IMG/VR virus record: IMGVR_UViG_3300032331_003609
Location: 124,001 to 188,000 of that record
Strand: one strand, 5' to 3'
Length of the DNA stretch: 64,000 nt
Every line of letters begins with the position of its first letter. Position 1 is the first letter of the stretch. The notes beneath the pieces were generated by a model that saw only the letters and a program-made list of their open reading frames with translations, ran no database searches and had not been told where the DNA came from. Shown here one piece after another: positions 17,430 through 41,780 of the stretch. The position numbers and the translations under genes are program-made.

Positions 17430-19679
17430 ATGGATAGAATTAATTTCGACGATAATCTGTCACAGATAAAAATGGAAAAGGCTAAAGCTGCTGCCACTCT
17501 TTTAAATGAGAGCTGGGGTGGTAACGGAGGTTTTATTCCAGGCGCTGCTGGCTCGTATACAGACGGTTTACAAAAAGAGATAGCTAATATGTCTACAGAA
17601 GACAGAAACCTAGCTAAACCTTCTTTTTCTGTTGGTGTGTTAGAAACAGCAATGGCTTTAAACAATACATCATTCACTGAATTGCCAGAAGCTAAGGTCC
17701 TGGTTGAGAAATACATCAATCATGCAGCGGTTAAAGGAATTTCTGAGGCTTACCTGATTGAATCAATGATCTCTGAATTGGAAAACTTTGCTTGGGAAAA
17801 GAATGTAAAATCTGCATTAAATACCCTAAAGAAAACATTTGAAAGCAATAGAAGAGAAATTGAAGTAGCAAAGGCTATTGAAGAAATTAATAGATCAGCA
17901 GGTAGAGATTTATTTTCTGGTATTGTTGAATCAATGAGAAATTGGTTAGCAGCAGATCAAAGAATTTCAGAAAGTCTTTTAAGAGACCTTAAGAAATGGG
18001 GATTTAACCCAACAGTTAGAAATCTAGTTGAGAAGGTATCTTATTTGGAGAATAACAGCTCAAGCAGATTTAGTATTAAAGTAGCATCTGATACATGCAG
18101 TGTCAGCCCTATTATTGCTCCAAGTTTAGTTACTGAAAGTTCTTCAATATTTGTAACATCTGATAGATTCTTCAGAGCTACAGAAGAAGGAGTATCTGTA
18201 ATGGAAAGAGCAGAAGCTTCAAAACTTCCTGGTAAATTCTTAAATGCAGTTTTAGCACTTTCTAATCCAAATGTTAAAGTTAACGAAAGTGGTTTAGATC
18301 TTTATATAGGTAAAAATAAAATCTCTGTTGTTTTTGAAAGTGAAACAGATACTAAAAATATTTTCTTCAACGGTAAAAGAGTAGCAGAAGATAAATTAGG
18401 ATTCACATTATCTTTTGAATTAAGAAATGGCTTCCAAGGATCTGCTAATGCAATTGAAAATGCAGTTCAAGTAGTAGAAGCTGCTAACTATCTTTCTGAA
18501 ATTGATTTTGGTAAAAAGATCTCTTCTAAAATCTACGAAGGAGTAGAAGCTAACGTATTTAAATTTGGCGAAAAGGTTTACGTTCATAAAGTAAACCCTG
18601 CTATGAGAAAGAACGAGCTTTTAGAAGGAAACGGCAATCAAGCAGTTAATATAGTAAAAGAATTCTTAGGATTTGATCTTTCTGAATCTATGACAGAAGT
18701 TTTAGAAAAAGAAGAAAGAATCTTAGCTATCATGAAGAATGACAAAGAATCTATCAAGAAAAACCTATCTATCGTAGAGAGCGAAATGAACAAGATTGCT
18801 AAAGCACTTGAATCAAATCCTTCTTTACAAAATTCTGATGAAATTAAAGAAGCTCAAGTAATGCTTAGCAATGAGTCTACTGCATTAAAATCTAAATGGA
18901 ATCAAATCTCAGTTGAGATTGAAAGATTCGAAAAAGGAGCTAAGAAGGTATCTAAAATCTCTGAAAACGAAGGATATGGTATTAACACCGATGTTAAAAT
19001 AAACAGAAACGGAGAAAAAGGTAGAGTTGTAGGTGTAAATGGTAATTCTAAAACATACACAGTTATGTTTGAGAATGGAAAAACCGGAGAATTTTTCTTC
19101 AATGATGTAACTGATATCTCAGATGAAATTAACAACATTGAATTACAACCAGTTAATGATTTACAAGAAGAGGAAACAAACGAATCAGCTGAAGCTAACT
19201 TAGCAGAAGCACCGGACACAACTGCAGCAGGATCAGCAAAAGATATTGACGATTTAAATGCTCACAATTTAGCAAATTTAGATGTTAAAGGTGGTAAGAA
19301 ATTAAAAGAAGATCCAAAAGGAACTTCTGGTAAACATGAATTAGCAACTGCTCCTGAGCACACAGCAAAGACAGGAAAGAAATTCGTTCAAAAAGAAAAG
19401 AATGCTAACTTAGCTGATGCACCACATAGCACATCTGCTGGATCAGCAAAAGATATTGAAGATTTAAAAGCTCACAATTTAGCAATTATCGAGTCTCAAA
19501 AGAATGCTAACTACGAAAAAGCACCTTCTGGCAAGAAAGAGAAAGTTAAAAAATTAGTTCTTGGTAAAAAAGGAACTTTGGCTAAAGCACCAGGTAATAG
19601 CAAGCATAACGGTAAAGGTGATCACGAGCCTCTTAATAGAGCAACCCTATCTAAAGCACCGTCTACAAAAAAAAAGTAA
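17430..19679 (+). CDS. Large head-associated protein (prohead core / internal head-like), 749 aa
   Basis: Late promoter; many L/I/V-x-E sites (LLNES, IVES, VTES, ISEN); coiled coil, SH3/KOW-like segment, C-terminal LA.AP repeats; lies in the head module. Confidence 0.7.
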   Translation: MDRINFDDNLSQIKMEKAKAAATLLNESWGGNGGFIPGAAGSYTDGLQKEIANMSTEDRNLAKPSFSVGVLETAMALNNTSFTELPEAKVLVEKYINHAAVKGISEAYLIESMISELENFAWEKNVKSALNTLKKTFESNRREIEVAKAIEEINRSAGRDLFSGIVESMRNWLAADQRISESLLRDLKKWGFNPTVRNLVEKVSYLENNSSSRFSIKVASDTCSVSPIIAPSLVTESSSIFVTSDRFFRATEEGVSVMERAEASKLPGKFLNAVLALSNPNVKVNESGLDLYIGKNKISVVFESETDTKNIFFNGKRVAEDKLGFTLSFELRNGFQGSANAIENAVQVVEAANYLSEIDFGKKISSKIYEGVEANVFKFGEKVYVHKVNPAMRKNELLEGNGNQAVNIVKEFLGFDLSESMTEVLEKEERILAIMKNDKESIKKNLSIVESEMNKIAKALESNPSLQNSDEIKEAQVMLSNESTALKSKWNQISVEIERFEKGAKKVSKISENEGYGINTDVKINRNGEKGRVVGVNGNSKTYTVMFENGKTGEFFFNDVTDISDEINNIELQPVNDLQEEETNESAEANLAEAPDTTAAGSAKDIDDLNAHNLANLDVKGGKKLKEDPKGTSGKHELATAPEHTAKTGKKFVQKEKNANLADAPHSTSAGSAKDIEDLKAHNLAIIESQKNANYEKAPSGKKEKVKKLVLGKKGTLAKAPGNSKHNGKGDHEPLNRATLSKAPSTKKK

Positions 19680-19930
19680 ACACAATTTCTGAACATAGAA
19701 AAGAGTTCGTTTCCGAAGGTATAGGAAGCGAACTCTCTTTTTTTGCAGAGGATCTGACAAAGACCATAGGTAAATTGAAGGAATTAGAAACAACCAGTCA
19801 CTCTAACAGTAAGATAGGATTGAAGACCATACAAGACAGCATAAAAAAACTTGTGGCTTTAGAGGAAGATGTAACTAGACAAATGGAAACATTAGAAGGT
19901 CATTTCTCTCAAGAAAATAATACAGACTAA
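19676..19930 (+). CDS. ATG-less 84-codon open frame, candidate -1 frameshift extension of 17430..19679
   Basis: VNTISEHRKEFVSEGIGSELSFFAEDLTKTIGKLKELETTSHSNSKIGLKTIQDSIKKLVALEEDVTRQMETLEGHFSQENNTD*; frame open from 19655; fills the whole gap before gp55. Confidence 0.55.
   Translation, partial: VNTISEHRKEFVSEGIGSELSFFAEDLTKTIGKLKELETTSHSNSKIGLKTIQDSIKKLVALEEDVTRQMETLEGHFSQENNTD
19702..19744 (+). terminator. 13-bp stem-loop plus T-run (terminator or attenuator) inside the candidate extension frame
   Basis: AGAGTTCGTTTCC-gaaggtata-GGAAGCGAACTCT (one G-U pair) then CTTTTTTT. Confidence 0.65.
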
Positions 19931-19935
19931 ACCAA

Positions 19936-20292
19936 ATGGAGTATGTTAAAAACAAAGATCTAAAAAGAGCGATATTAGAATCAAAAGAGAATGGAAAATT
20001 AACCGCAGAAACGGTTAAAATGTTTACTTTAATAGTAAATGGTCTTTCAAAAACAAAATCCTATCGGGATATTGAAGATAAAGAAGATTGCATAGCATTT
20101 GGAATGGAGGATTTAATTAAATATTGGGACAGATTTGATCCAGCTAAATCCGATAATCCATTTGCATTTATTTCACAAATTGCCAAAAACGGAATGCAAA
20201 AAGGTTGGAAAAAAATACATTCAACCAGGTCTATAAAAACCATCCCCTTTTCTAGACTTACAAGGGATGATAATCAAAATTATAATGTCTAA
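19936..20292 (+). CDS. gp55: Late-transcription sigma factor, T4 gp55-like
   Basis: YVKNKDL...LIVNGLS...SY...EDCI..G.E.LIKY...FDP.KSDNPFAFISQIA.NG matches the gp55 pattern (YVNNKEL...LIAEGLS...NFD..K..NPHAYITQ). Confidence 0.85.
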   Translation: MEYVKNKDLKRAILESKENGKLTAETVKMFTLIVNGLSKTKSYRDIEDKEDCIAFGMEDLIKYWDRFDPAKSDNPFAFISQIAKNGMQKGWKKIHSTRSIKTIPFSRLTRDDNQNYNV

Positions 20293-20779
20293 AACCAATA
20301 TAAAAAATGTCAAACCTAATGGCAGATTTAAATCGGGAAAATTCGTACCAAGAAATCCCGAGAAGTATATTGGCGATATTCACAACATAATCTATAGATC
20401 ATCATGGGAAGGGAGATTTTGTATGTATTGCGATCAGAATCCTAGCATCTTAAAATGGGCTTCAGAAGCGGTGCAAATAGAATATTGGAATCCCATTGAT
20501 AAAAAAACCCACATTTACCACCCCGATTATTACATAAAGGTTCAAAAAAGGGATATGTCAACTGAGGATTGGATTATTGAAATAAAACCATCTTCCCAAT
20601 ATCAGTTAGAAAAAAAACCAGTTTTAAAAGAACCGATGACGGAAAAGAGAATTAGATCTCATAACGATCAAATGCAAATATGGATCGTGAACAGAGCTAA
20701 ATTTGATGCTGCAATGAATTTTGCAAAGTTTAATGGATATAAGTTTGGAGCCATAGATGAAAATTTCATTTTTAGATAA
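20267..20779 (+). CDS. gp4: Head completion nuclease, T4 gp4-like (TnsA-type fold)
   Basis: GKF.P.NPEKYIGD...I.YRSSWE..F...CD.NP.ILKWASE; YHPDYY; IEIKP. Confidence 0.9.
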   Translation: MIIKIIMSKTNIKNVKPNGRFKSGKFVPRNPEKYIGDIHNIIYRSSWEGRFCMYCDQNPSILKWASEAVQIEYWNPIDKKTHIYHPDYYIKVQKRDMSTEDWIIEIKPSSQYQLEKKPVLKEPMTEKRIRSHNDQMQIWIVNRAKFDAAMNFAKFNGYKFGAIDENFIFR

Positions 20780-21351
20780 TGGATTTTAAAATAGAAATAA
20801 GAGATGCTATAGAGAAAGCTGGATCCCCTGCAAAATTAGCGGAGGAAAGTTTTTTGAATTATTCAAAGAACTATGCAGTACTTACTAGTTCAGAGTCGCT
20901 TAGGAGTTTAGTTCAGGGAAAGATCTACACATTTTATTATGATTCAGATATTAAGGCAGATAAGGGATTTGTTAATAGAAGACCCGTAGTGTTCTTTGAA
21001 TCAAAAGAGATAACCCCATCAAAAAGCATAATAAAAGGAATAGACATGATCTTGCTAAGTCCAAAAGACAGAAAGAATTTCTTCATCCGATTACATTCTA
21101 TTTATGGTAAAATCATGGATCAGAACGAAAAAAGAGATAGATCTGCGCACATGCCTTTAAGATTTGACCCCTCAGTATTAGAAACTTTAATGGGAGGTAT
21201 CAAGTATAATCATGCATACACCGGATACAAAATGGAAAAAATAAAAGGATTAAAGGAAATAGAAAGAGAGGAGTGGAGATATTTAGTCTATCTAAACACC
21301 AAATCTATTGAGGGGGCTGATTTGAACGATATATACAACAAATATCAATAA
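20779..21351 (+). CDS. gp2: DNA end protector, T4 gp2-like
   Basis: GKIYTFYYD...RPVV...G..M..L.PK.R pattern; synteny gp4-gp2-portal. Confidence 0.65.
   Translation: MDFKIEIRDAIEKAGSPAKLAEESFLNYSKNYAVLTSSESLRSLVQGKIYTFYYDSDIKADKGFVNRRPVVFFESKEITPSKSIIKGIDMILLSPKDRKNFFIRLHSIYGKIMDQNEKRDRSAHMPLRFDPSVLETLMGGIKYNHAYTGYKMEKIKGLKEIEREEWRYLVYLNTKSIEGADLNDIYNKYQ
21328..21335 (+). promoter_or_regulatory. Late promoter GATATATA inside the gp2 3' end
   Basis: 15 nt before the portal-1 ATG. Confidence 0.55.
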
Positions 21352-22943
21352 TGGCAGGATTTTTAGGAGATAATAGGAGCAATCCATTTTTTAGTAACGT
21401 TCTAAATAACCTTAGAAAAATAGGTTCTTTTGGAATGAGCTATGGTGACATGGTTGTTAAAAACTCCCAAGCGGTAGGTACTACCGAGGCAATGTTCTTA
21501 AAACAGGGCGGAATTCAGGATGAAAATTTCTTATATGCTTTAAGAAAGGCAGATACCACAGCTAAACAATACATAGCTTATTTTGATAGGGATTACATCA
21601 ATAAGAAAACATATCTTAGAAGCTTTGCACTTAATCCTGAAATAGAATTTATTTTAGATACCGTTTGCGACGAAGCTATTGTATATGATGATAAAAACTT
21701 CTTTTCATATTTTGTATCAACAGATATCAAGGGTATTGGCGAAGAGATGGAACAGCAAATACAAGACAGATATAAAGAAATTTATAGCTTATTTGGCTTT
21801 AATGAAGGAATCTCTGCATGGCACTTTTTTAGGAACTTTTTAATTGATGGGATATTAGCATTTGAAATCATATTTGACTCGAGGGGAAAGAATATTATAG
21901 GATTTAAAGAATTAGATCCTGCATCCTTATTGCCTTCCGTCGAAAAACAACTTGACGGTAATTTCGTAGAATGCTGGATTCAATACCCAGACAATCCCTC
22001 TTTATCTAGAAAATTGTACGATTCACAGATTATTTATATTTCATACGCTAAGGGAAATACAACAACAAGAGTAAGTTATGTAGAAAGATTGATTAGATCT
22101 TTTAATCTATTAAGAATTATGGAGCATACCAGAGTAATTTGGAATGTTATGAATTCATCATATAGAATGACAATGACTGTTCCAGTAGGAACAAAATCCC
22201 CGCAAAAAGCAAAACAATCATTAGCTGAGCTGATGAGCATCTATAAAGAAGATATTAGTCTTAATCAAGATAGCGGTGAGCTTTTTGTGAACGGAAAACC
22301 AAACATTCAGTTCTTTAAAAATTATCTGATGCCGTCTACTCCCAACGGAACACCTGATATAACACCATTAGCAGGAAGCGGAGATGCAACACCTTTTAGC
22401 GATTTAAAAGCTTTAGCATATTTTGCAGATAAGCTTAAATTAGATTCTAAAATTCCATATTCAAGATTTGATAGAGAGGATAGAGGTACACAGGGTACAT
22501 TCAGTGGTAACGCAGAAGGATTAGATCAAGAAGAGATAAGATTCTTTAAATTCATTACAAGATTAAGATCCATCTATCAAGATATACTTCTAAAACCTTT
22601 ATGGATACAATTTTGCTTGGATCATCCAGAGCATAAAAGGGATTTTATGGTTAAGAGCCAATTCGGTTTAGATTATGTTAAAGATAATTCTTTTGCTGAA
22701 ATAAAATATATGGAGATCCTCAATGCAAGAAAAGATCAAGTAACTAAAATTGCAGGTCTTTTAGATGCTGACGGAACACCGTATTTCTCGTTGAATTATG
22801 TACTAGACAAGTATCTTGGAATGACCGATGATGATAAGATAGCTAACGAGAAAGCAAAAGAGGCAGCAGAGAAGAAGAAAAAAGAGAAGGAGAAAGAAGC
22901 AGGAGAAGCAGGAGAAGCACCAGAAGGAGAATTTAAACTTTAA
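21351..22943 (+). CDS. gp20: Portal vertex protein, T4 gp20-like, paralog A
   Basis: PEIEFILD..CDEAIVYD, FR..LIDG.L.F, ELDP, SY.ERLIRSFNLLRIME...VIW, KA.Q....LM..YK, EEIRFFKFI.RLR. Confidence 0.9.
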   Translation: MAGFLGDNRSNPFFSNVLNNLRKIGSFGMSYGDMVVKNSQAVGTTEAMFLKQGGIQDENFLYALRKADTTAKQYIAYFDRDYINKKTYLRSFALNPEIEFILDTVCDEAIVYDDKNFFSYFVSTDIKGIGEEMEQQIQDRYKEIYSLFGFNEGISAWHFFRNFLIDGILAFEIIFDSRGKNIIGFKELDPASLLPSVEKQLDGNFVECWIQYPDNPSLSRKLYDSQIIYISYAKGNTTTRVSYVERLIRSFNLLRIMEHTRVIWNVMNSSYRMTMTVPVGTKSPQKAKQSLAELMSIYKEDISLNQDSGELFVNGKPNIQFFKNYLMPSTPNGTPDITPLAGSGDATPFSDLKALAYFADKLKLDSKIPYSRFDREDRGTQGTFSGNAEGLDQEEIRFFKFITRLRSIYQDILLKPLWIQFCLDHPEHKRDFMVKSQFGLDYVKDNSFAEIKYMEILNARKDQVTKIAGLLDADGTPYFSLNYVLDKYLGMTDDDKIANEKAKEAAEKKKKEKEKEAGEAGEAPEGEFKL

Positions 22944-22946
22944 TAA

Positions 22947-24680
22947 ATGGCAGGATTCATTGACAATTTTTCACAGAGTAACCCAAACATGGGGCGTATA
23001 CTCAAAGCCGTAAGTAAAATCGGAAGCTTCGGAATGGAGTATAAAGATCTTGTTGTGAAAAATTCTCAAGCAATTGGGGTTTCAGAAGCAATGATGAGAC
23101 AAAAATTAGCATTAACAGATTCTGATGAGGATTTTATTTTTAGCCTTGCAGCTGCAGATACCACTAGTAGAAAATACATTGCTTATTTTGATAAAGATTA
23201 TCCATACAAAAGAGATTTTTTAAGAAGCTTTGCACTTAATGCCGAGATAGAATGGATTTTAGACATCCTTGCTGATGAAGCTATAGTTTATGATGACAGA
23301 AATTTTTGCTGCAGTCTATCACTGGTTAATATGGATCTAAAGGATGAAATAGCAGACTCATTGAGGGAGAACTTTAGAAAGATCTATGTCTCCCATGGAT
23401 TTAACAACGGAATTTCAGCTTGGCAGTATTTTAGACAATTTTTAATAGATGGATTTTTATCTTTTGAAATAGTTTATTCAGATGATGGAAAACAAATAGT
23501 AGGATTTAAAGAATTAGATCCAGTTTCATTGACCCCATCTGTAGAGAGAAACCCTGGAGGACAAACTGTTCAAATATGGTATCAGTACTATGGAGACAGT
23601 GTTAGAGAAAGAAAGCTATATGATGCTCAGGTCATATATGTTTCTTTTGCAAATGGTAATGGCACAAGCAGAACAAGTTATGCTGAAAGATTAATTAGAT
23701 CCCATAATCTTCTAAAGATAATGGAGCATACCAGAATCATTTGGAATGTTATGAATGCTTCTTTCCGATTGAAGATGACTATCCCGGTTGGTTCTAGATC
23801 TCCTCAAAAAGCAAAAGAGACATTAGGGGAATTGATGAACATGTATAAGGAGGATATTAAACTTAATACTGATTCCGGAGAATTAAGTATTAACGGACGT
23901 CCAAATTTACAATTTTATAAGAACTATCTTTTCCCTGTCCAAGGAGGAGAATCACCTAAAATAGAGACTATTAATAATGCAGGGCCAAACTTAAATGTTA
24001 TAGATGCTGTGGTTTATTTCTTCAATAAATTAAAAGCAGATTCTAAGATACCATTTAATAGATTCGCTGCTAGATCTGGTGGAACCGTAGGAACATATAA
24101 GATAGGAGCAGAATCTGCAGAAAGGGATGAAATCAGATATAATAAATTCATTAATAGAATTAGATCAATCTATCAAGAGATCATACTAAAACCATTATGG
24201 ATTCAGATGACTTTGGATTATCCTGAACTTGATAAGGATTCTATATTTAGATCCCAATTAGGGCTTAAATTTAACTCCGATAATCAGTTTGGTGAATCTA
24301 AAGAGATAGAACAACTAATTAAGAAAATAGATTTTATAGCAGGACTTTCTGAAATTAAAGAAAAGAAAGGCGAAGAAGAACTTCCTTATTTTAGCCAGGA
24401 TTTTCTTATAGATAAATTTTTAGGATTGACCAACGAAGATAGAAGGGTTAATAATATTTACAAGAAAAAGGAGGAGGAGGAAGGCAAAGCAGCAGCTGCA
24501 ATTTCAGGATCTGCTACACCAGCACCAGCAGGTGGAGGTGACACAGCAACTCCAGCAGCAGAAACTGGAGGCGATGAAGCAGCACCAGCAGCTGAAGCCC
24601 CTGCGGAAGAAGCACCAGCAGCAGAAGCCACACCAGCACCAGCACCAGCAGCAGCAGCAACAGAGACTGAAGCACCTTAA
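22947..24680 (+). CDS. gp20: Portal vertex protein, T4 gp20-like, paralog B with Ala/Pro/Glu-rich tail
   Basis: Same motifs as paralog A along the full length (RDEIRYNKFI.RIR); C-terminal PAAEAPAEEAPAAEA tail. Confidence 0.9.
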   Translation: MAGFIDNFSQSNPNMGRILKAVSKIGSFGMEYKDLVVKNSQAIGVSEAMMRQKLALTDSDEDFIFSLAAADTTSRKYIAYFDKDYPYKRDFLRSFALNAEIEWILDILADEAIVYDDRNFCCSLSLVNMDLKDEIADSLRENFRKIYVSHGFNNGISAWQYFRQFLIDGFLSFEIVYSDDGKQIVGFKELDPVSLTPSVERNPGGQTVQIWYQYYGDSVRERKLYDAQVIYVSFANGNGTSRTSYAERLIRSHNLLKIMEHTRIIWNVMNASFRLKMTIPVGSRSPQKAKETLGELMNMYKEDIKLNTDSGELSINGRPNLQFYKNYLFPVQGGESPKIETINNAGPNLNVIDAVVYFFNKLKADSKIPFNRFAARSGGTVGTYKIGAESAERDEIRYNKFINRIRSIYQEIILKPLWIQMTLDYPELDKDSIFRSQLGLKFNSDNQFGESKEIEQLIKKIDFIAGLSEIKEKKGEEELPYFSQDFLIDKFLGLTNEDRRVNNIYKKKEEEEGKAAAAISGSATPAPAGGGDTATPAAETGGDEAAPAAEAPAEEAPAAEATPAPAPAAAATETEAP

Positions 24681-37871: not shown

Positions 37872-39953
37872 ATGAGTCTTAACCCTGAATTCGTTTTGGT
37901 CTTGGAAAAATCTTCACATAACCTGAAGTCCGAGAAGAATGGTAACGAATATTATCTTGAAGGTATAGCAGCAGTGTTTGGTAAAGAGAATTCAAACCAA
38001 AGAATCTACGAGGAAAGAGAATATCTTCCCCATTTGCAATATTTAAAAGAAAAGATAGAACAAAAAAGATTAGTAGGTGAATTAGATCACCCTAAGGAAT
38101 TTGATGTGTCTTTAAAGAATATTTCACACCTAGTTGAAGAGCTTGCTTATGATCAAGAGAATAGAACTTTAAGAATTAAAGTTAGACTTTTAGATACACC
38201 AGCAGGTAAAATAGCTAAATCTTTAGTTGATGCTGGTATTCCAGTTTCTATCTCATCAAGAGCAGCAGGCAACGTGATGGAAAACAAAAAAGTACAAATT
38301 AAGAAGATTTTTACCTATGATCTAGTTGCTGATCCTGGATTTGAGAATGCTCAATTAGAAAGAGTTTACGAAAGCTATGGATACAATCTTAACGAAAAGT
38401 CAAAAAATGAATCCATTTTAAATGGTCTTCCTTTGATGAACGAAAGCTTAGGATTAGAAAATGATTCAAATTTTAAGATATATAGAATCAAAGATCAAGA
38501 TAAGATACAAAAGCTTCTAGATAAGGAGCCAAATAAGAGTTTAATCATGGAAAATAATTTCGTTACAGCGGAAGAAATGAATGGATATTCTAAACTAATC
38601 AAAAAAGAAATGGACACTATTAAAGGGTCTATTGAATCATTGAAAGGGATTAAAGAATCTTCCAAAATAACAGAATCATCTTCTCTTGAGGAAAGAGTTG
38701 GTAAGTTAGAAAAGTATGCTGATTATTTAGCAGAAAACCTAGAGGCATCTATTAAGTATGGTGAATACCTAGCTGAAAATTTAGAAGATTCAGTTTCTTA
38801 TTCTAAGTATCTTGCAGAGAACCTAGACAAATCTATTTCTTATGCAAAATATCTTGCTGAGCATTTAGATCACAATATCTCTTATTCTGAGTACATTGCA
38901 GAGAACGTTGACAACAACGTAACAGCAGTTAAAGGTCTAACAGAGAAAGTTGATCAATCTATTGCTTATGCAGAATATGTAGCAGAGAACGTAGACAAGA
39001 ACATTAAGTATAGCGAATACCTTGCTGAAAACTTAGATAAGAACATCTCTTATTCTGAGTATCTTGCTGAGAACGTAGATAAGAACATTTCTTATTCTGA
39101 GTACTTAGCAGAAAACCTAGATAAAGGTTTAGCTTATAGCGAATACTTAGCTGAGAAATTAGATAAGAACATTTCTTATTCTGAGTACTTAGCAGAAAAC
39201 CTAGATAAAGGTTTAGCTTATTCTGATTATCTTGGTGAGAACCTAGATAAGACAGTTCATTACAGTGAGTATATCGCTGAAAAATTAGCTAACAACATCA
39301 GCTATGCAGAATACATCGCTGAGTCTGTAAATGCAGCTTCAGGAACCGCAGAGGTAAAAGAAGCAGTAACAAAAGCAATTTCTGAAAACACAAGAACTTC
39401 AGGATATGCAGGAGATTACACAGAGATCTCTTCTAAAATTGACAATTTATTGAACACTGTCGGTAAACAAAAGACAGAAGAAATAGCAGAAAATAAGAAC
39501 TATCCTTTCTTAAAGCTTATGGGCGAACAAGGACAAAGAGAATTTTTATCACTGCACGAAGGCCAAAAACAAAAGGTCGCCAAATCCTTAAACGAAAACA
39601 ATTACTCATCCGAAAAAGAGGTAGTTGAAATTATGGGTAAAACTCTGAATGAGCAAAATCAATCCGGAGAAAAATTCCTAGATTTAATGCCAGAAAAATA
39701 CAAAACTACATGGGAGAATATGAATGAGTCTCAAAAGGCCTCTATATTAGCTCAAAGTAAGTTTCATAAATTGGATACTCCTTACCAAATCCAGAATTTC
39801 TGGGCTACAAGAGGTATTGCAGTTACCAAGGCAAATATCGAAAGAATAGACGAATCCCAAGAACAAATAACCGCAGCTCCTCAGCCAAAGGGAATATCTA
39901 GAGAATATTTAGATAATCTTTCTGAAGCTTTAGCTGTTAGGTTTAAAAAATAA
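37872..39953 (+). CDS. gp21: Prohead protease (gp21, U9 family) fused to gp22-like scaffold
   Basis: LEGIA...N.N.RIY, GELDHP, NISH, LDTPAGKIAK.L, ISSRA.G, TYDLVADPGF; then about 500 aa helical scaffold directly before gp23. Confidence 0.93.
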   Translation: MSLNPEFVLVLEKSSHNLKSEKNGNEYYLEGIAAVFGKENSNQRIYEEREYLPHLQYLKEKIEQKRLVGELDHPKEFDVSLKNISHLVEELAYDQENRTLRIKVRLLDTPAGKIAKSLVDAGIPVSISSRAAGNVMENKKVQIKKIFTYDLVADPGFENAQLERVYESYGYNLNEKSKNESILNGLPLMNESLGLENDSNFKIYRIKDQDKIQKLLDKEPNKSLIMENNFVTAEEMNGYSKLIKKEMDTIKGSIESLKGIKESSKITESSSLEERVGKLEKYADYLAENLEASIKYGEYLAENLEDSVSYSKYLAENLDKSISYAKYLAEHLDHNISYSEYIAENVDNNVTAVKGLTEKVDQSIAYAEYVAENVDKNIKYSEYLAENLDKNISYSEYLAENVDKNISYSEYLAENLDKGLAYSEYLAEKLDKNISYSEYLAENLDKGLAYSDYLGENLDKTVHYSEYIAEKLANNISYAEYIAESVNAASGTAEVKEAVTKAISENTRTSGYAGDYTEISSKIDNLLNTVGKQKTEEIAENKNYPFLKLMGEQGQREFLSLHEGQKQKVAKSLNENNYSSEKEVVEIMGKTLNEQNQSGEKFLDLMPEKYKTTWENMNESQKASILAQSKFHKLDTPYQIQNFWATRGIAVTKANIERIDESQEQITAAPQPKGISREYLDNLSEALAVRFKK
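38712..39341 (+). repeat. 15 tandem 42-bp (14-aa) repeats, consensus SYSEYLAENLDKNI
   Basis: Counted in translation from KYADYLAENLEASI to SYAEYIAESVNAAS; unit 6 is degenerate. Confidence 0.92.
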
Positions 39954-39968
39954 ACATTTTTATAGAAA

Positions 39969-41726
39969 ATGCAACTTATCAATCAACATGAAATCTATGA
40001 AACCTGGGCACCAATATTGGAAAGCAAAACAGGTATTCAAGAGAGAGGTAAATTAGACTGGTTAACTAAATACTGTCATTACCACTCATTAAACGAATCT
40101 GCCGGAGCGTATAACTCTTTAGGCGTATTAAACGGTATGGGCCAAGTATCTCCTGCTTCTAACGTAGGTTTATCTGGCGGTCCTGCTGGCTTTTATGCAG
40201 GCGGATCTTATTCTGGAACTGGTCTTGGTTCTGGCGATAAATTCCCTTCTCTTTTACCTTTAGCTATTCAAGTAGCTGCTAAAACAGTAGGTTTTGATAT
40301 CGTTCCAGTTATCCCAATGAGCGGTCCTACAGGCGTATTATCATACTTAGACTATGTTTACGCAGGTGGTAAATTATCTGGTACTGACTCTGTATCTCCA
40401 TACACAGCAAACACTCCAGATTTAATTAAAGTTCCAACAACAACAGCTTCTCCAGTTACTGGTTTAGCAGTAGGAACCACTTACCTTTTAGGTGCTTCTG
40501 GTCTTTCTTCAACAAAAGACTTAGACTCTGCAGGTGTAGGTGCTTTAGTAGCTGGTAAATTCGTCGGTAGTTCAAGAATCGATGGTTTCCCAATTTTCCA
40601 AGTGGTAGCATTAACTGTAGGTTTCTCTATTGCTGACGCAATCGGGGCAGACGCAGTTATTTACTCTGGTTCATATAATACAGGTACAAAGGTTTATACA
40701 ATCTCTGCAACAGTAGGATATGCAAACGGTGCTGCTCAATTAGTTAAAACTTTAGAAGATCACGTACAAGGATTTACTGGTTCTGGCGTTGCTAACGACG
40801 GTACATGGTCTGGTCCTTATGTAGACGGTACTAAAGCTTACGATCCAATGTCAAGAGGAACTGCAGAAGGCACTTACTTCAAGTCATTAGGTCTTTCTAC
40901 ATTCACTAAGTTTGTAGAGGCTGGTACATTCCAAGTTGCTGCTTCTGTTACAACTGAGCAAATCCAAGATTTGAACAAGCAATTCGGTATCGACGTAGTT
41001 TCTATGATCGAGAACGCACTTGTTAACGAGGTTTCTCAAGCGATCAACAAGCACATCTTATCTAGAGCATTTGCTTTAGGTTGGTCTAACCACTATGAAT
41101 TTGCAAACACCGAATTAGGTGGAGCATCTTCTGCTTCTCTAAACATCAATTTAAATATTGGTTCTGGTGGAGCTTCAACCGCATCTTTCATCGGTAAGGA
41201 CAATGGATCTTTAACAATCTATACTCCTGGCGATATTGCTACAGGCGGATACGAGAACCAATCAACTGTACAAAGAAGATTATTCTCAAGAATCTTGGCT
41301 GCTGCTAACGTAGTAGCAAACAGAGGAAGAAGAGGACCTGCTAACTTTATTGTTACTAACGCTCAGGTAGCTTCTGCTTTACAAGATATTTCACAATTCA
41401 CATTTGCTCCTTTTACAAACACGTTAACTCAAAATAACGGTACTTTATATCCAGTTGGTTCAATCGCTGGTATGACCGTTTATGTTGATCAAAACATGTC
41501 TTTTGGCGATACGAGAGTATTAGTTGGAAGAAAAGGTGCTGATGACGAACCAGGTATGAAATTTATGCCTTACATGATGGCTGAGTCAATTCAGACTATC
41601 TCTGAAGGTACAATGTCACCTAAAATTGCAGTTAAGTCTAGATACTCTTTAGTAGAGGCTGGACATCATCCTCAAACAATGTACTTATGCTTCAAAGCTA
41701 TAGTACCTGCAACTGGTATCGCTTAG
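39969..41726 (+). CDS. gp23: Major capsid protein, T4 gp23-like
   Basis: W.PIL, VGFDIVPV.PMSGPTG, Q.AA..T.EQIQDL...GID...., NF.V...VAS.L, G...G..VYVD, G.KF.PY, SRY.L; strong codon bias. Confidence 0.96.
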   Translation: MQLINQHEIYETWAPILESKTGIQERGKLDWLTKYCHYHSLNESAGAYNSLGVLNGMGQVSPASNVGLSGGPAGFYAGGSYSGTGLGSGDKFPSLLPLAIQVAAKTVGFDIVPVIPMSGPTGVLSYLDYVYAGGKLSGTDSVSPYTANTPDLIKVPTTTASPVTGLAVGTTYLLGASGLSSTKDLDSAGVGALVAGKFVGSSRIDGFPIFQVVALTVGFSIADAIGADAVIYSGSYNTGTKVYTISATVGYANGAAQLVKTLEDHVQGFTGSGVANDGTWSGPYVDGTKAYDPMSRGTAEGTYFKSLGLSTFTKFVEAGTFQVAASVTTEQIQDLNKQFGIDVVSMIENALVNEVSQAINKHILSRAFALGWSNHYEFANTELGGASSASLNINLNIGSGGASTASFIGKDNGSLTIYTPGDIATGGYENQSTVQRRLFSRILAAANVVANRGRRGPANFIVTNAQVASALQDISQFTFAPFTNTLTQNNGTLYPVGSIAGMTVYVDQNMSFGDTRVLVGRKGADDEPGMKFMPYMMAESIQTISEGTMSPKIAVKSRYSLVEAGHHPQTMYLCFKAIVPATGIA

Positions 41727-41750
41727 TATTAATTAAGTTAACCTTTAATA

Positions 41751-41780
41751 AAAAGCCTCTGAGAGATCAGAGGCTTTTTT
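41751..41780 (+). terminator. Intrinsic terminator after gp23
   Basis: AAAAGCCTCTGA-gaga-TCAGAGGCTTTT followed by further Ts. Confidence 0.9.

What the first reader, a model, noticed from the sequence alone, without database searches (positions are those of the whole stretch)
19655..19930. Candidate -1 programmed frameshift (A-AAA-AAG) extending a major head protein
The 749-aa gene ends TCT ACA AAA AAA AAG TAA, placing the dnaX/IS-type heptamer A-AAA-AAG (19670-19676) in the correct phase just before the stop. The -1 frame has no ATG until its last 15 codons. It stays open for 84 codons of protein-like helical sequence with I/V-S-E protease-type sites, ending 5 nt before gp55 and filling an otherwise empty 256-bp gap. 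A 13-bp hairpin with a T-run (19702-19744) lies 25 nt downstream. That is too far for a classic stimulator but could terminate most transcripts, adding a second control on the long ~830-aa isoform. A head-module frameshift combined with attenuation is not something I know from T4-like phages.
Basis: partly seen in the sequence, partly recalled or inferred. Interest (0 to 1): 0.8.

Follow-up and report, generated by a model that had tools for sequence, protein, structure and literature searches.

The report
Conserved A9 recoding site extends phage protein
In a large family of uncultured T4-like phages, a run of nine A's followed by a stop codon ends a 749-residue gene of unknown function (not the major head protein). 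It very probably lets part of the product continue in the -1 frame into a conserved 84-residue helical tail whose coding sequence runs through a terminator-like hairpin and ends at the late sigma factor gene.

Summary
ORF 17430-19679 ends ACA AAA AAA AAG TAA. The -1 frame is open for 84 codons (19676-19927), and a 13-bp hairpin plus T7 sits at 19702-19744.

The extension is real coding sequence reached by recoding:
- 45 distinct junctions from relatives (30-99% protein identity) all keep at least nine A's, then G, C or A, then a stop.
- All keep a -1 ORF (80-86 aa, or 53-60 aa in the deepest clade). It is under purifying selection (dN/dS about 0.26) and has no conserved start codon.
- It is never fused in frame.
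- Two lineages lost the run and the extension together.

The gene is not the major head protein, which lies at 39969-41726. Its function is unknown.

The hairpin covaries and sits 20-29 nt from the shift site. It is placed like the window's other intrinsic terminators, not like a frameshift stimulator.

Nine A's is the length at which bacterial RNA polymerase slips efficiently. RNA polymerase slippage (about 0.5) and ribosomal -1 frameshifting (about 0.4) give the same protein and cannot be separated here.

In 35 of 40 relatives the extension's stop overlaps the gp55 start codon.

The parts
17430..19679 (+). 0-frame ORF, 749 aa, function unknown. Folded part is about residues 70-570: helical N-domain, beta domains, coiled coil 427-504 and a small SH3/Tudor-like barrel 520-562. 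Residues 571-749 form a disordered Lys-rich tail with repeated N-L-A-x-A-P motifs.
   Evidence: No Pfam or PHROG family. Foldseek matches only uncharacterised phage proteins.
19667..19675 (+). Run of nine A's: the shift-prone site. It contains two overlapping in-phase heptamers, A_AAA_AAA and A_AAA_AAG.
   Evidence: Conserved as 9 A's (43) or 10 A's (2) in 45 of 45 distinct junctions. It is the only A/T run of 9 or more in the window.
19670..19676 (+). Heptamer A_AAA_AAG in 0-frame phase.
   Evidence: The last sense codon is AAG 38, AAC 6, AAA 1 among relatives, with at least 4 changes on the tree.
19677..19679 (+). 0-frame stop TAA immediately after the run.
   Evidence: The stop is adjacent in 45 of 45 junctions (TAA 42, TAG 2, TGA 1).
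19676..19930 (+). -1 frame extension ORF: 84 codons plus stop. Predicted antiparallel helical hairpin (helices 16-44 and 49-81).
   Evidence: dN/dS 0.26; synonymous variation at invariant residues. (no in-frame fusion or full-length standalone copy among 1.84 billion representatives). (pLDDT 78.8, pTM 0.63).
19702..19736 (+). Conserved RNA hairpin (13 bp, 9-nt loop) inside the extension ORF; the stem of a terminator-like element.
   Evidence: Covariation (94.7% of cells paired against 31-42% in slid controls; 6 of 12 pairs with double changes; 0 of 500 shuffles)..
19737..19744 (+). C + T7 tract after the hairpin (encodes part of L-S-F-F).
   Evidence: A T-rich tract follows the stem in all 39 relatives. 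The Phe codon there is TTT in 34 of 34.
19936..20292 (+). gp55-type late sigma factor gene, 5 nt after the extension's stop.
   Evidence: In 35 of 40 distinct relatives the extension's stop overlaps this ATG (ATGA 24; TAATG or TGATG 11).

Best explanation
Programmed -1 recoding at the conserved A9 run makes two proteins from one gene: a major 749-aa form that stops at TAA 19677, and a minor roughly 833-aa form carrying an 84-residue helical-hairpin tail.

The route I consider most likely is transcriptional. When the nine A's fill the RNA-DNA hybrid, the host RNA polymerase realigns and adds one A. Ordinary translation of the A10 mRNA then reads K-K-K-V-N-T-I-S-E... Ribosomal -1 slippage on A_AAA_AAG next to the stop probably adds to this, because the run is also a correct heptamer.

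The hairpin plus T-tract 23 nt after the 0-frame stop is the gene's intrinsic terminator. Only transcripts that read through it can encode the whole tail. It therefore limits the long form as a second gate.

Shown: conservation of the run, the stop, the -1 ORF and the hairpin; coding selection on the tail; joint loss of run and tail. Inferred: that the shift happens, by which route, how often, and that the hairpin terminates transcription.

Confidence that recoding of either kind occurs is about 0.9. The 0.5 given here is for slippage being the main route.
For: - All 45 distinct junctions from relatives at 30-99% protein identity have at least 9 A's, then G, C or A, then a stop. All have a -1 ORF of 53-86 codons. 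The +1 frame stops within 1-7 codons.
- The codon before the run changes amino acid (ACA, TCA, GCA, AGA, CAA) but always ends in A. The first Lys codon is always AAA, although AAA is only 72% of Lys codons and TCA only 29% of TCN codons in this gene. The constraint therefore covers nine nucleotides.
- The base after the run changed at least 4 times on the tree.
- Nine A's or T's is the length at which bacterial RNA polymerase slips efficiently, and it matches the 9-10 bp hybrid. Thermus dnaX uses such a run (PMC5009743, PMC1088944).
- Consensus folding shows no structure 5-9 nt after the site, and by eye I saw no Shine-Dalgarno-like element upstream. The only conserved structure starts 20-29 nt away at a variable distance.
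- The tail is coding. Median dN/dS is 0.26. The other two frames carry 248-334 stops. Invariant residues use several synonymous codons, including Ser TCN and AGY. The fold prediction is confident.
- There is no conserved start codon. Gene callers begin fragments at five different positions.
- No in-frame fusion appears among the 103 homologues returned, about 90 listed cluster members, or 1.84 billion representatives.
- The run and the tail were lost together in two separate clades.
- This is the only A/T run of 9 or more in the window.
- The hairpin covaries. It lies 23 nt after the stop, like the other three strong hairpin + T-tract elements on the + strand (two lie 24 and 32 nt after a stop).
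Against:
- The heptamer phase and the adjacent stop are invariant. Both are classic features of ribosomal frameshifting, and a stop in the A site can stimulate a P-site slip.
- Nine A's also make two overlapping in-phase heptamers, so run length alone does not exclude a purely ribosomal route.
- A_AAA_AAC works without a known stimulator in IS1 (PMC4066793).
- Some AT-rich bacteria appear to tolerate A9 runs without slippage (PMC1088944). The host is unknown.
- Judged by the empirical decay of run lengths (82, 27, 8, 1), the depletion of runs of 9 or more is not significant.
Confidence: 0.5

Rival explanations
1. Purely or mainly ribosomal -1 programmed frameshifting. tRNA-Lys slips on A_AAA_AAG, or on the overlapping A_AAA_AAA, stimulated by the slowly decoded adjacent stop codon. 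The mRNA carries A9.
For: - The heptamer is in the correct phase in 45 of 45 junctions, and the stop is immediately 3' in 45 of 45.
- The AAG, AAC and AAA variants are all known shift-prone heptamers in bacteria (PMC4066793).
- Two tandem heptamers would also explain a nine-A requirement.
- Low-efficiency shifting without a stimulator is enough in phage lambda G-T and in IS1 (PMC5009743, PMC4066793).
- A distant terminator is reported to influence T7 gene 10 frameshifting (PMC5009743).
Against: - There is no conserved stimulatory structure at 5-9 nt, and I saw no upstream Shine-Dalgarno-like element. The spacer to the hairpin is 20-29 nt and variable.
- In the bacteria tested, an A9 run gives RNA polymerase slippage at tens of percent (PMC5009743), which would outweigh an unstimulated ribosomal shift.
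- The third base of the heptamer is free to change.
Confidence: 0.38
2. The 84-codon ORF is a separate small gene, translated from its own (possibly non-canonical) start or by reinitiation after the TAA. It is not a C-terminal extension.
For: Gene callers do-74-aa fragments of it. The window has TTG at 19775.
Against: - No start codon is conserved. TTG 19775 is TTA or CTA in relatives.
- Called fragments start at five different profile positions, and none covers the first 10 residues, yet conservation and the open frame begin at the run itself.
- In the deepest clade the -1 ORF continues the x-A-P repeat motif of the 0-frame tail.
- The run and the ORF are always present or absent together.
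Confidence: 0.04
3. The gap is non-coding regulatory DNA (a terminator plus a gp55 promoter), and the open -1 frame is incidental.
For: - A terminator-like hairpin is present.
- Lineages without the extension still conserve a block that corresponds to the LETS..GKI part of the tail. This could be a gp55 promoter.
Against: - The frame is open in 40 distinct long sequences while the other frames carry 248-334 stops. dN/dS is 0.26, and invariant residues switch between synonymous codons.
- The fold prediction is confident.
- The stop overlaps the gp55 ATG in 35 of 40 relatives.
Confidence: 0.03
4. Assembly or sequencing error in a homopolymer, or a recent frameshift mutation (pseudogene): the true gene is one 833-aa ORF.
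For: - Homopolymers are error-prone.
- Two database proteins look like A8 variants (P0033 ...KKSK, P0073 ...KKSN).
- Reads could not be checked.
Against: - The interrupted form recurs in 45 distinct junctions and in all about 90 listed members of six clusters, from JGI, ENA, NCBI and Logan assemblies. No fused form appears anywhere.
- The arrangement persists across branches of 0.5-1.1 substitutions per site.
Confidence: 0.02

Closest known systems
Thermus thermophilus dnaX (tau/gamma) and IS-element or Shigella mxiE/spa13 transcriptional slippage at 9-nt A or T runs
   Same: A conserved run of nine A's in the sense strand. Two protein isoforms from one gene. Short dead-end ORFs in the unused frame. 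In spa13 the slippage-derived extension also overlaps the start of the next gene and affects its expression (PMC5009743, PMC1088944).
   Different: Here the standard product is the short one and slippage gives the longer one; in dnaX it is the reverse. The gene is a phage gene of unknown function. A terminator-like hairpin lies inside the trans-frame ORF. Slippage has not been demonstrated.
E. coli dnaX and IS1/IS3-type -1 ribosomal frameshifting on A_AAA_AAG or A_AAA_AAC
   Same: The same heptamers in the same phase. In some bacteria the 0-frame stop follows the site directly and the long product comes from the shift (PMC5009743).
   Different: dnaX and IS3-family sites have a stem-loop or pseudoknot 5-9 nt downstream and often an upstream Shine-Dalgarno-like element. 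Neither is present here. The run is nine A's rather than six.
Phage C-terminal extensions made by frameshifting: T7/T3 gene 10A/10B, Lactobacillus A2, Listeria A118/A500/PSA capsid and tail proteins, lambda G/GT
   Same: A shift near the end of a phage gene adds a C-terminal domain to a minority of the product. For T7 gene 10, a distant transcription terminator is reported to influence the shift (PMC5009743).
   Different: Those proteins are known capsid, tail or chaperone proteins, and many extensions are Ig-like. Here the protein is uncharacterised and the extension is a helical hairpin. The phage is T4-like. In T7 the terminator lies after the extended ORF, whereas here it lies inside it.
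Rho-independent (intrinsic) terminators
   Same: A G+C-containing 12-13-bp stem followed by a T-tract, placed 23 nt after a stop codon. Two of the three other strong examples on the + strand sit 24 and 32 nt after a stop, including the one after the major head gene.
   Different: It is translated in the -1 frame, and its arms encode conserved residues (E-F ... S-E-L, or E-S ... N-R-L). Termination has not been measured.

Membership tests
-1 programmed ribosomal frameshift site (X_XXY_YYZ type) | Slippery heptamer in the 0-frame phase | tested here: met
   A_AAA_AAG at 19670-19676. In phase in 45 of 45 relatives, as AAG, AAC or AAA.
-1 programmed ribosomal frameshift site (X_XXY_YYZ type) | Stimulatory stem-loop or pseudoknot about 5-9 nt downstream, or a Shine-Dalgarno-like element upstream | tested here: not met
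   The consensus folds of two clades show only a hairpin that starts 20-29 nt after the heptamer, at a variable distance. I saw no GGAG-like element in the 30 nt upstream. An adjacent stop codon, a weaker known stimulator, is present.
-1 programmed ribosomal frameshift site (X_XXY_YYZ type) | Trans-frame ORF conserved as coding sequence | tested here: met
   dN/dS 0.26, no stops in 40 distinct sequences, and synonymous codon switching at invariant residues.
-1 programmed ribosomal frameshift site (X_XXY_YYZ type) | Trans-frame protein made from unaltered mRNA | not testable with these tools
   Needs RNA sequencing plus mass spectrometry.
Programmed transcriptional slippage | Homopolymeric A or T run of about 9 or more, conserved among homologues with split ORFs | tested here: met
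   9 A's (43) or 10 A's (2) in 45 of 45 junctions. The synonymous third base of the preceding codon is always A. The run is absent exactly where the extension is absent.
Programmed transcriptional slippage | Heterogeneous run length in mRNA but not in DNA | not testable with these tools
Intrinsic terminator | Stable stem followed directly by a T-tract, downstream of a stop codon | tested here: met
   -18 to -28 kcal/mol in 39 relatives with a T-rich tail. Covariation. Same placement as the window's other such elements. My own scan found it; the standard scan missed it, probably because its loop limit is 8 nt.
Intrinsic terminator | Transcripts end at the T-tract in vivo | not testable with these tools
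   Needs 3'-end mapping.
T4-type major head protein (gp23) | Sequence or fold match to the major capsid protein family | tested here: not met
   No Pfam or PHROG hit. No capsid protein among the Foldseek matches. The phrog_138 major head protein is at 39969-41726.
Frameshift-added Ig-like decoration domains of phage structural proteins | The extension is an Ig-like beta domain | tested here: not met
   The extension is predicted as two long antiparallel helices. There is no significant PDB match.

The most novel reading that the evidence does not exclude
The recoding event and the embedded terminator form one switch. On standard transcripts the leading ribosome stops at TAA, 23 nt before the hairpin. 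The hairpin forms and transcription ends, giving a short mRNA and the short protein. On A10 transcripts, or after a ribosomal shift, the ribosome follows the polymerase into the hairpin arms and suppresses termination. Those transcripts then extend into gp55, gp4, gp2 and the portal genes. The stop-start overlap (ATGA or TAATG in 35 of 40 relatives) passes ribosomes on to gp55. Polymerase slippage or frameshifting would then set both the ratio of two protein isoforms and the read-through expression of the late sigma factor. This would be an attenuator driven by recoding.
Probability: 0.2. Interest if true: 0.85.

Novelty: new variant of a known kind. Interest (0 to 1): 0.64.

Why it matters
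It is a very well conserved recoding site in T4-like phages. My two literature searches found no description of it, and one paper notes that some T4-like phages make their two tail-chaperone forms without frameshifting (PMC10885494).

Automatic annotation leaves a roughly 250-nt 'gap', or calls meaningless fragments, in more than a hundred public contigs. An 80-86-residue domain is therefore missing from the protein databases.

The site is both a nine-A slippage run and an in-phase heptamer. That makes it a clean natural case for separating polymerase slippage from ribosomal slippage.

A covarying terminator hairpin inside the trans-frame ORF, together with a stop-start overlap with the late sigma factor gene, suggests that recoding may be linked to transcription termination and late-gene control. 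I found no described example of such a link.

Tried and rejected
- **Read-level check of the A-run:** I substituted many independent assemblies.
- **Naming the 749-aa protein:**
  - Pfam, PHROGs, PDB sequences with a 27-sequence profile, Foldseek against PDB and BFVD, and the ESM Atlas gave only uncharacterised phage proteins.
  - They also gave a weak SH3/Tudor-like barrel (MSSS, 9 of 27 members, best E 1.3e-4).
- **Naming the extension:** no family match and no significant PDB fold match; it is a generic helical hairpin.
- **Cultured-phage relatives:**
  - The searches found only an 86-nt gp4 match and one 26%-identical hit in an unannotated 462-kb uncultured phage.
  - Its homologue lacks the tail and the run but is also followed by gp55.
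- **Rfam:** only a chance-level PyrG_leader hit (E 0.59, 25 bits against a gathering score of 65).
- **T4 late promoter TATAAATA:** not enriched, and none lies near the site.
- **TTG 19775 as a start:** rejected because it is not conserved.
- **Hairpin as a classic frameshift stimulator:** rejected on spacing.
- **A-run pairing with the T-tract in the single-sequence fold:** not pursued. Any A-run pairs with any U-tract, and the U-tract is inside the polymerase at the moment of termination.
- **Depletion of runs of 9 or more:** 1 observed against about 8 expected under a Markov model. This is not significant against the empirical decay of run lengths, so I use it only as weak support.
Full report
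**1. The observation**

- The 749-codon ORF 17430-19679 ends TCT ACA AAA AAA AAG TAA.
- The A-run is 19667-19675 (nine A's), and the heptamer A_AAA_AAG (19670-19676) is in phase.
- From 19676 the -1 frame stays open for 84 codons (VNTISEHRKEF...), with its stop at 19928-19930.
- That stop lies 5 nt before the ATG of the next gene, a gp55-type late sigma factor (PHROG 234, E 6.5e-16; Pfam Sigma70_r2).
- The hairpin is 19702-19714 / 19724-19736 (13 bp, 9-nt loop, -20.3 kcal/mol, z = -4.0). It is followed by C and seven T's.

**2. What the gene is**

It is not the major head protein.
- It matches no Pfam or PHROG family and no PDB sequence, even when searched with a 27-sequence profile.
- An AlphaFold model (pLDDT about 75-85 over residues 70-570) resembles only uncharacterised phage proteins. 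These include one from Tenacibaculum phage PTm1.
- Residues 571-749 are predicted disordered and Lys-rich, and they carry repeated N-L-A-x-A-P motifs.
- The real major head protein homologue is at 39969-41726 (phrog_138).

The neighbourhood is T4-like:
- collagen-like and laminin-G proteins lie upstream;
- gp55, gp4 (head closure), gp2 (DNA end protector) and two tandem portal genes lie downstream.

The window is part of IMGVR_UViG_3300032331_003609, a 244,850-bp contig.

**3. Relatives**

The protein has 103 homologues in the protein collection, and about 100 loci were fetched from IMG/VR and ENA. Among 45 distinct junction sequences:
- The run is 9 A's in 43 and 10 A's in 2.
- The two codons inside the run are AAA AAA in all 45.
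- The last sense codon is AAG (38), AAC (6) or AAA (1).
- A stop follows at once in all 45 (TAA 42, TAG 2, TGA 1).
- The codon before the run is ACA, TCA, GCA, AGA or CAA. That is five different amino acids, and it always ends in A. In this gene TCA is only 29% of TCN codons and AAA 72% of Lys codons.
- The -1 frame is open for 80-86 codons in the clades at 40-99% identity, and for 53-60 codons in the deepest clade at about 30% identity.
- In that deepest clade the extension has a different sequence but continues the x-A-P repeat of the 0-frame tail.
- The +1 frame closes after 1-7 codons.

A tree of the folded part of the protein needs only two changes for presence or absence of the extension (53 sequences, tail left out). 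In both clades that lack the extension the A-run is gone as well, and the proteins end KVKKGK or KKKSK/KNSK. One of these clades still shows a decayed remnant of the extension sequence. The last sense codon changed at least four times while the run stayed.

**4. Is the extension translated?**

- Pairwise dN/dS for the part after the hairpin has a median of 0.26 over 499 pairs. The other two frames of the same DNA carry 334 and 248 stops.
- Invariant residues (L41, T43, S44, S45, I51, G52, L63, L66 of the alignment) use several synonymous codons. Ser switches between TCN and AGY.
- A 22-sequence alignment folds as two long antiparallel helices with pLDDT above 90 in the core.
- There is no conserved start. 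TTG 19775 is TTA or CTA elsewhere.
- A profile of the extension was searched against 1.84 billion representative proteins. It found only eight short gene-caller fragments that begin at five different positions. None covers the first ten residues. No long protein carries the domain in frame.
- None of about 90 listed members of six clusters from JGI, ENA, NCBI and Logan assemblies is a fused form. This answers the homopolymer-error worry as far as is possible without reads.
- In 35 of 40 distinct relatives the extension's stop overlaps the gp55 start codon (ATGA in 24, TAATG or TGATG in 11). This is the usual signature of ribosomes reaching the end of an ORF. The window itself has a 5-nt gap.

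I put the probability of programmed recoding at about 0.9.

**5. The hairpin**

- It is present in all 39 aligned distinct long-extension sequences (-16 to -28 kcal/mol) and is always followed by a T-rich tract.
- On the alignment, 94.7% of cells pair, against 31-42% when the partner column is slid by 1-3 positions.
- Six of twelve pairs show changes on both sides (for example C-G/U-A/A-U against U-A/C-G/G-C between the two large clades). None of 500 shuffles reaches the observed covariation score.
- The amino acids change with the stem (E-F...S-E-L against E-S...N-R-L). Codons in the stem and T-tract are synonymously frozen (Phe TTT 34 of 34; Leu CTC 38 of 40). Selection therefore acts on the RNA as well as on the protein.
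- The stem starts 17-26 nt after the stop, which is 20-29 nt after the heptamer, and the distance varies.
- Consensus folds of both clades show no other structure between the site and the hairpin. It is therefore not a classic frameshift stimulator.
- On the + strand of the window there are only four strong hairpin + T-tract elements. Three of them lie 23-32 nt after a stop codon, including this one and the one after the major head gene. The fourth lies between convergent genes.
- The clades without an extension also have a terminator about 25 nt after the stop.

I conclude that this is the gene's intrinsic terminator, placed for the 0-frame stop, and that the extension is translated through it. 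Termination itself has not been shown.

**6. Which kind of recoding?**

Both routes give the same protein (...S-T-K-K-K-V-N-T...).

For RNA polymerase slippage:
- The constraint covers nine nucleotides, not seven.
- Nine A's or T's is the length at which bacterial polymerase slips efficiently, and it matches the 9-10-bp hybrid. Thermus dnaX and several IS elements use exactly this (PMC5009743, PMC1088944).
- The base after the run is free to change.
- There is no properly spaced stimulator.
- This is the only A/T run of 9 or more in 64 kb, against eight A8 and 27 A7 runs. This is weak support only.

For ribosomal frameshifting:
- The phase and the adjacent stop are invariant.
- Nine A's also form two overlapping in-phase heptamers.
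- A_AAA_AAC works without a stimulator in IS1 (PMC4066793).
- A distant terminator is reported to affect T7 gene 10 frameshifting (PMC5009743).
- Some AT-rich bacteria may resist slippage (PMC1088944), and the host is unknown.

I give slippage as the main route about 0.5 and ribosomal frameshifting about 0.4. Both may contribute.

**7. How it probably works**

Most transcripts encode the 749-aa form and, by inference, end at the terminator. A minority of product comes from A10 transcripts or shifted ribosomes on read-through transcripts. It carries a helical hairpin at the end of the long disordered tail. The two gates together would keep the long form rare, as with lambda G/GT or T7 10A/10B. 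What the tail binds is unknown.

A more speculative reading treats the terminator as an attenuator driven by recoding. A ribosome that continues in the -1 frame prevents the hairpin from forming. The stop-start overlap then hands ribosomes on to gp55. Shigella spa13/spa32 is a partial precedent for slippage controlling the next gene (PMC5009743). I give this about 0.2.

**8. Novelty**

Programmed recoding that adds a C-terminal extension is well known in phages and bacteria. What appears to be new:
- the gene family and the phage group (T4-like);
- the depth and strictness of conservation of an A9-plus-stop site;
- a covarying terminator hairpin inside the trans-frame ORF;
- the overlap of that ORF's stop with the late sigma factor gene.

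Two literature searches found nothing describing this.

Noticed in passing
window 21351-22943 and 22947-24680: Two tandem gp20-type portal genes (530 and 577 aa) that are 51% identical to each other. Both match Portal_T4 / phrog_213.
   Followed up: partly
L048 4890-4960; L053 4890-4950: In lineages that lost the run and the extension, a block corresponding to the LETS...GKI part of the extension is still conserved between two diverged contigs (TTGGAAACTTCTAT...GTGGTAAAAAGAT). It may hold a gp55 promoter embedded in the extension ORF.
   Followed up: no
window 37872-39953 and 39969-41779: A 693-aa protein has only its first ~220 residues matching the head maturation protease. It is followed by the 585-aa major head protein homologue and a strong terminator at 41750-41779, 24 nt after that gene's stop.
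   Followed up: partly
proteins P0033 and P0073: Two database homologues end ...KKSK or ...KKSN, as expected if their contigs carry A8 instead of A9. This is either a homopolymer error or a real length polymorphism at the run.
   Followed up: no
L104 3015-5264 (LR756500.1, 462-kb uncultured phage): A 617-aa distant homologue (26% identity) lacks the disordered tail, the A-run and the extension. It is nevertheless followed directly by a gp55 homologue, so the gene-X/gp55 adjacency is much older than the recoding site.
   Followed up: partly
L094 5036-5056: In the deepest clade the A9-C-TAA site is followed at once by a second run of seven A's (CTAAAAAAAATCC) in the extension.
   Followed up: no
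window 19140-19676 and relatives: The C-terminal tail of the family is built from repeats of N-L-A-x-A-P(G) spaced about 25-30 residues apart in Lys-rich disordered sequence. The repeat number varies (proteins of 728-785 aa, and 843-954 aa in other clades).
   Followed up: no
window 19685-19693 (extension residues 4-6) and alignment columns 7-9: An [ILV]-x-E motif sits 4-9 residues after the junction in all 40 long extensions. It resembles the T4 prohead protease site L/I-x-E. In one clade it overlaps the hairpin's 5' arm, so it may be an RNA constraint.
   Followed up: partly
window 19656-19744: Rfam gives a chance-level match to the PyrG leader (25 bits, E 0.59). That family is an attenuator that works by reiterative transcription. 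The match is not significant and is recorded only as a curiosity.
   Followed up: yes
window 19936-20292 / 20267-20779: The gp55 homologue is short (118 aa against a 181-position PHROG profile). Its end overlaps the start of the gp4-like gene by 26 nt.
   Followed up: no
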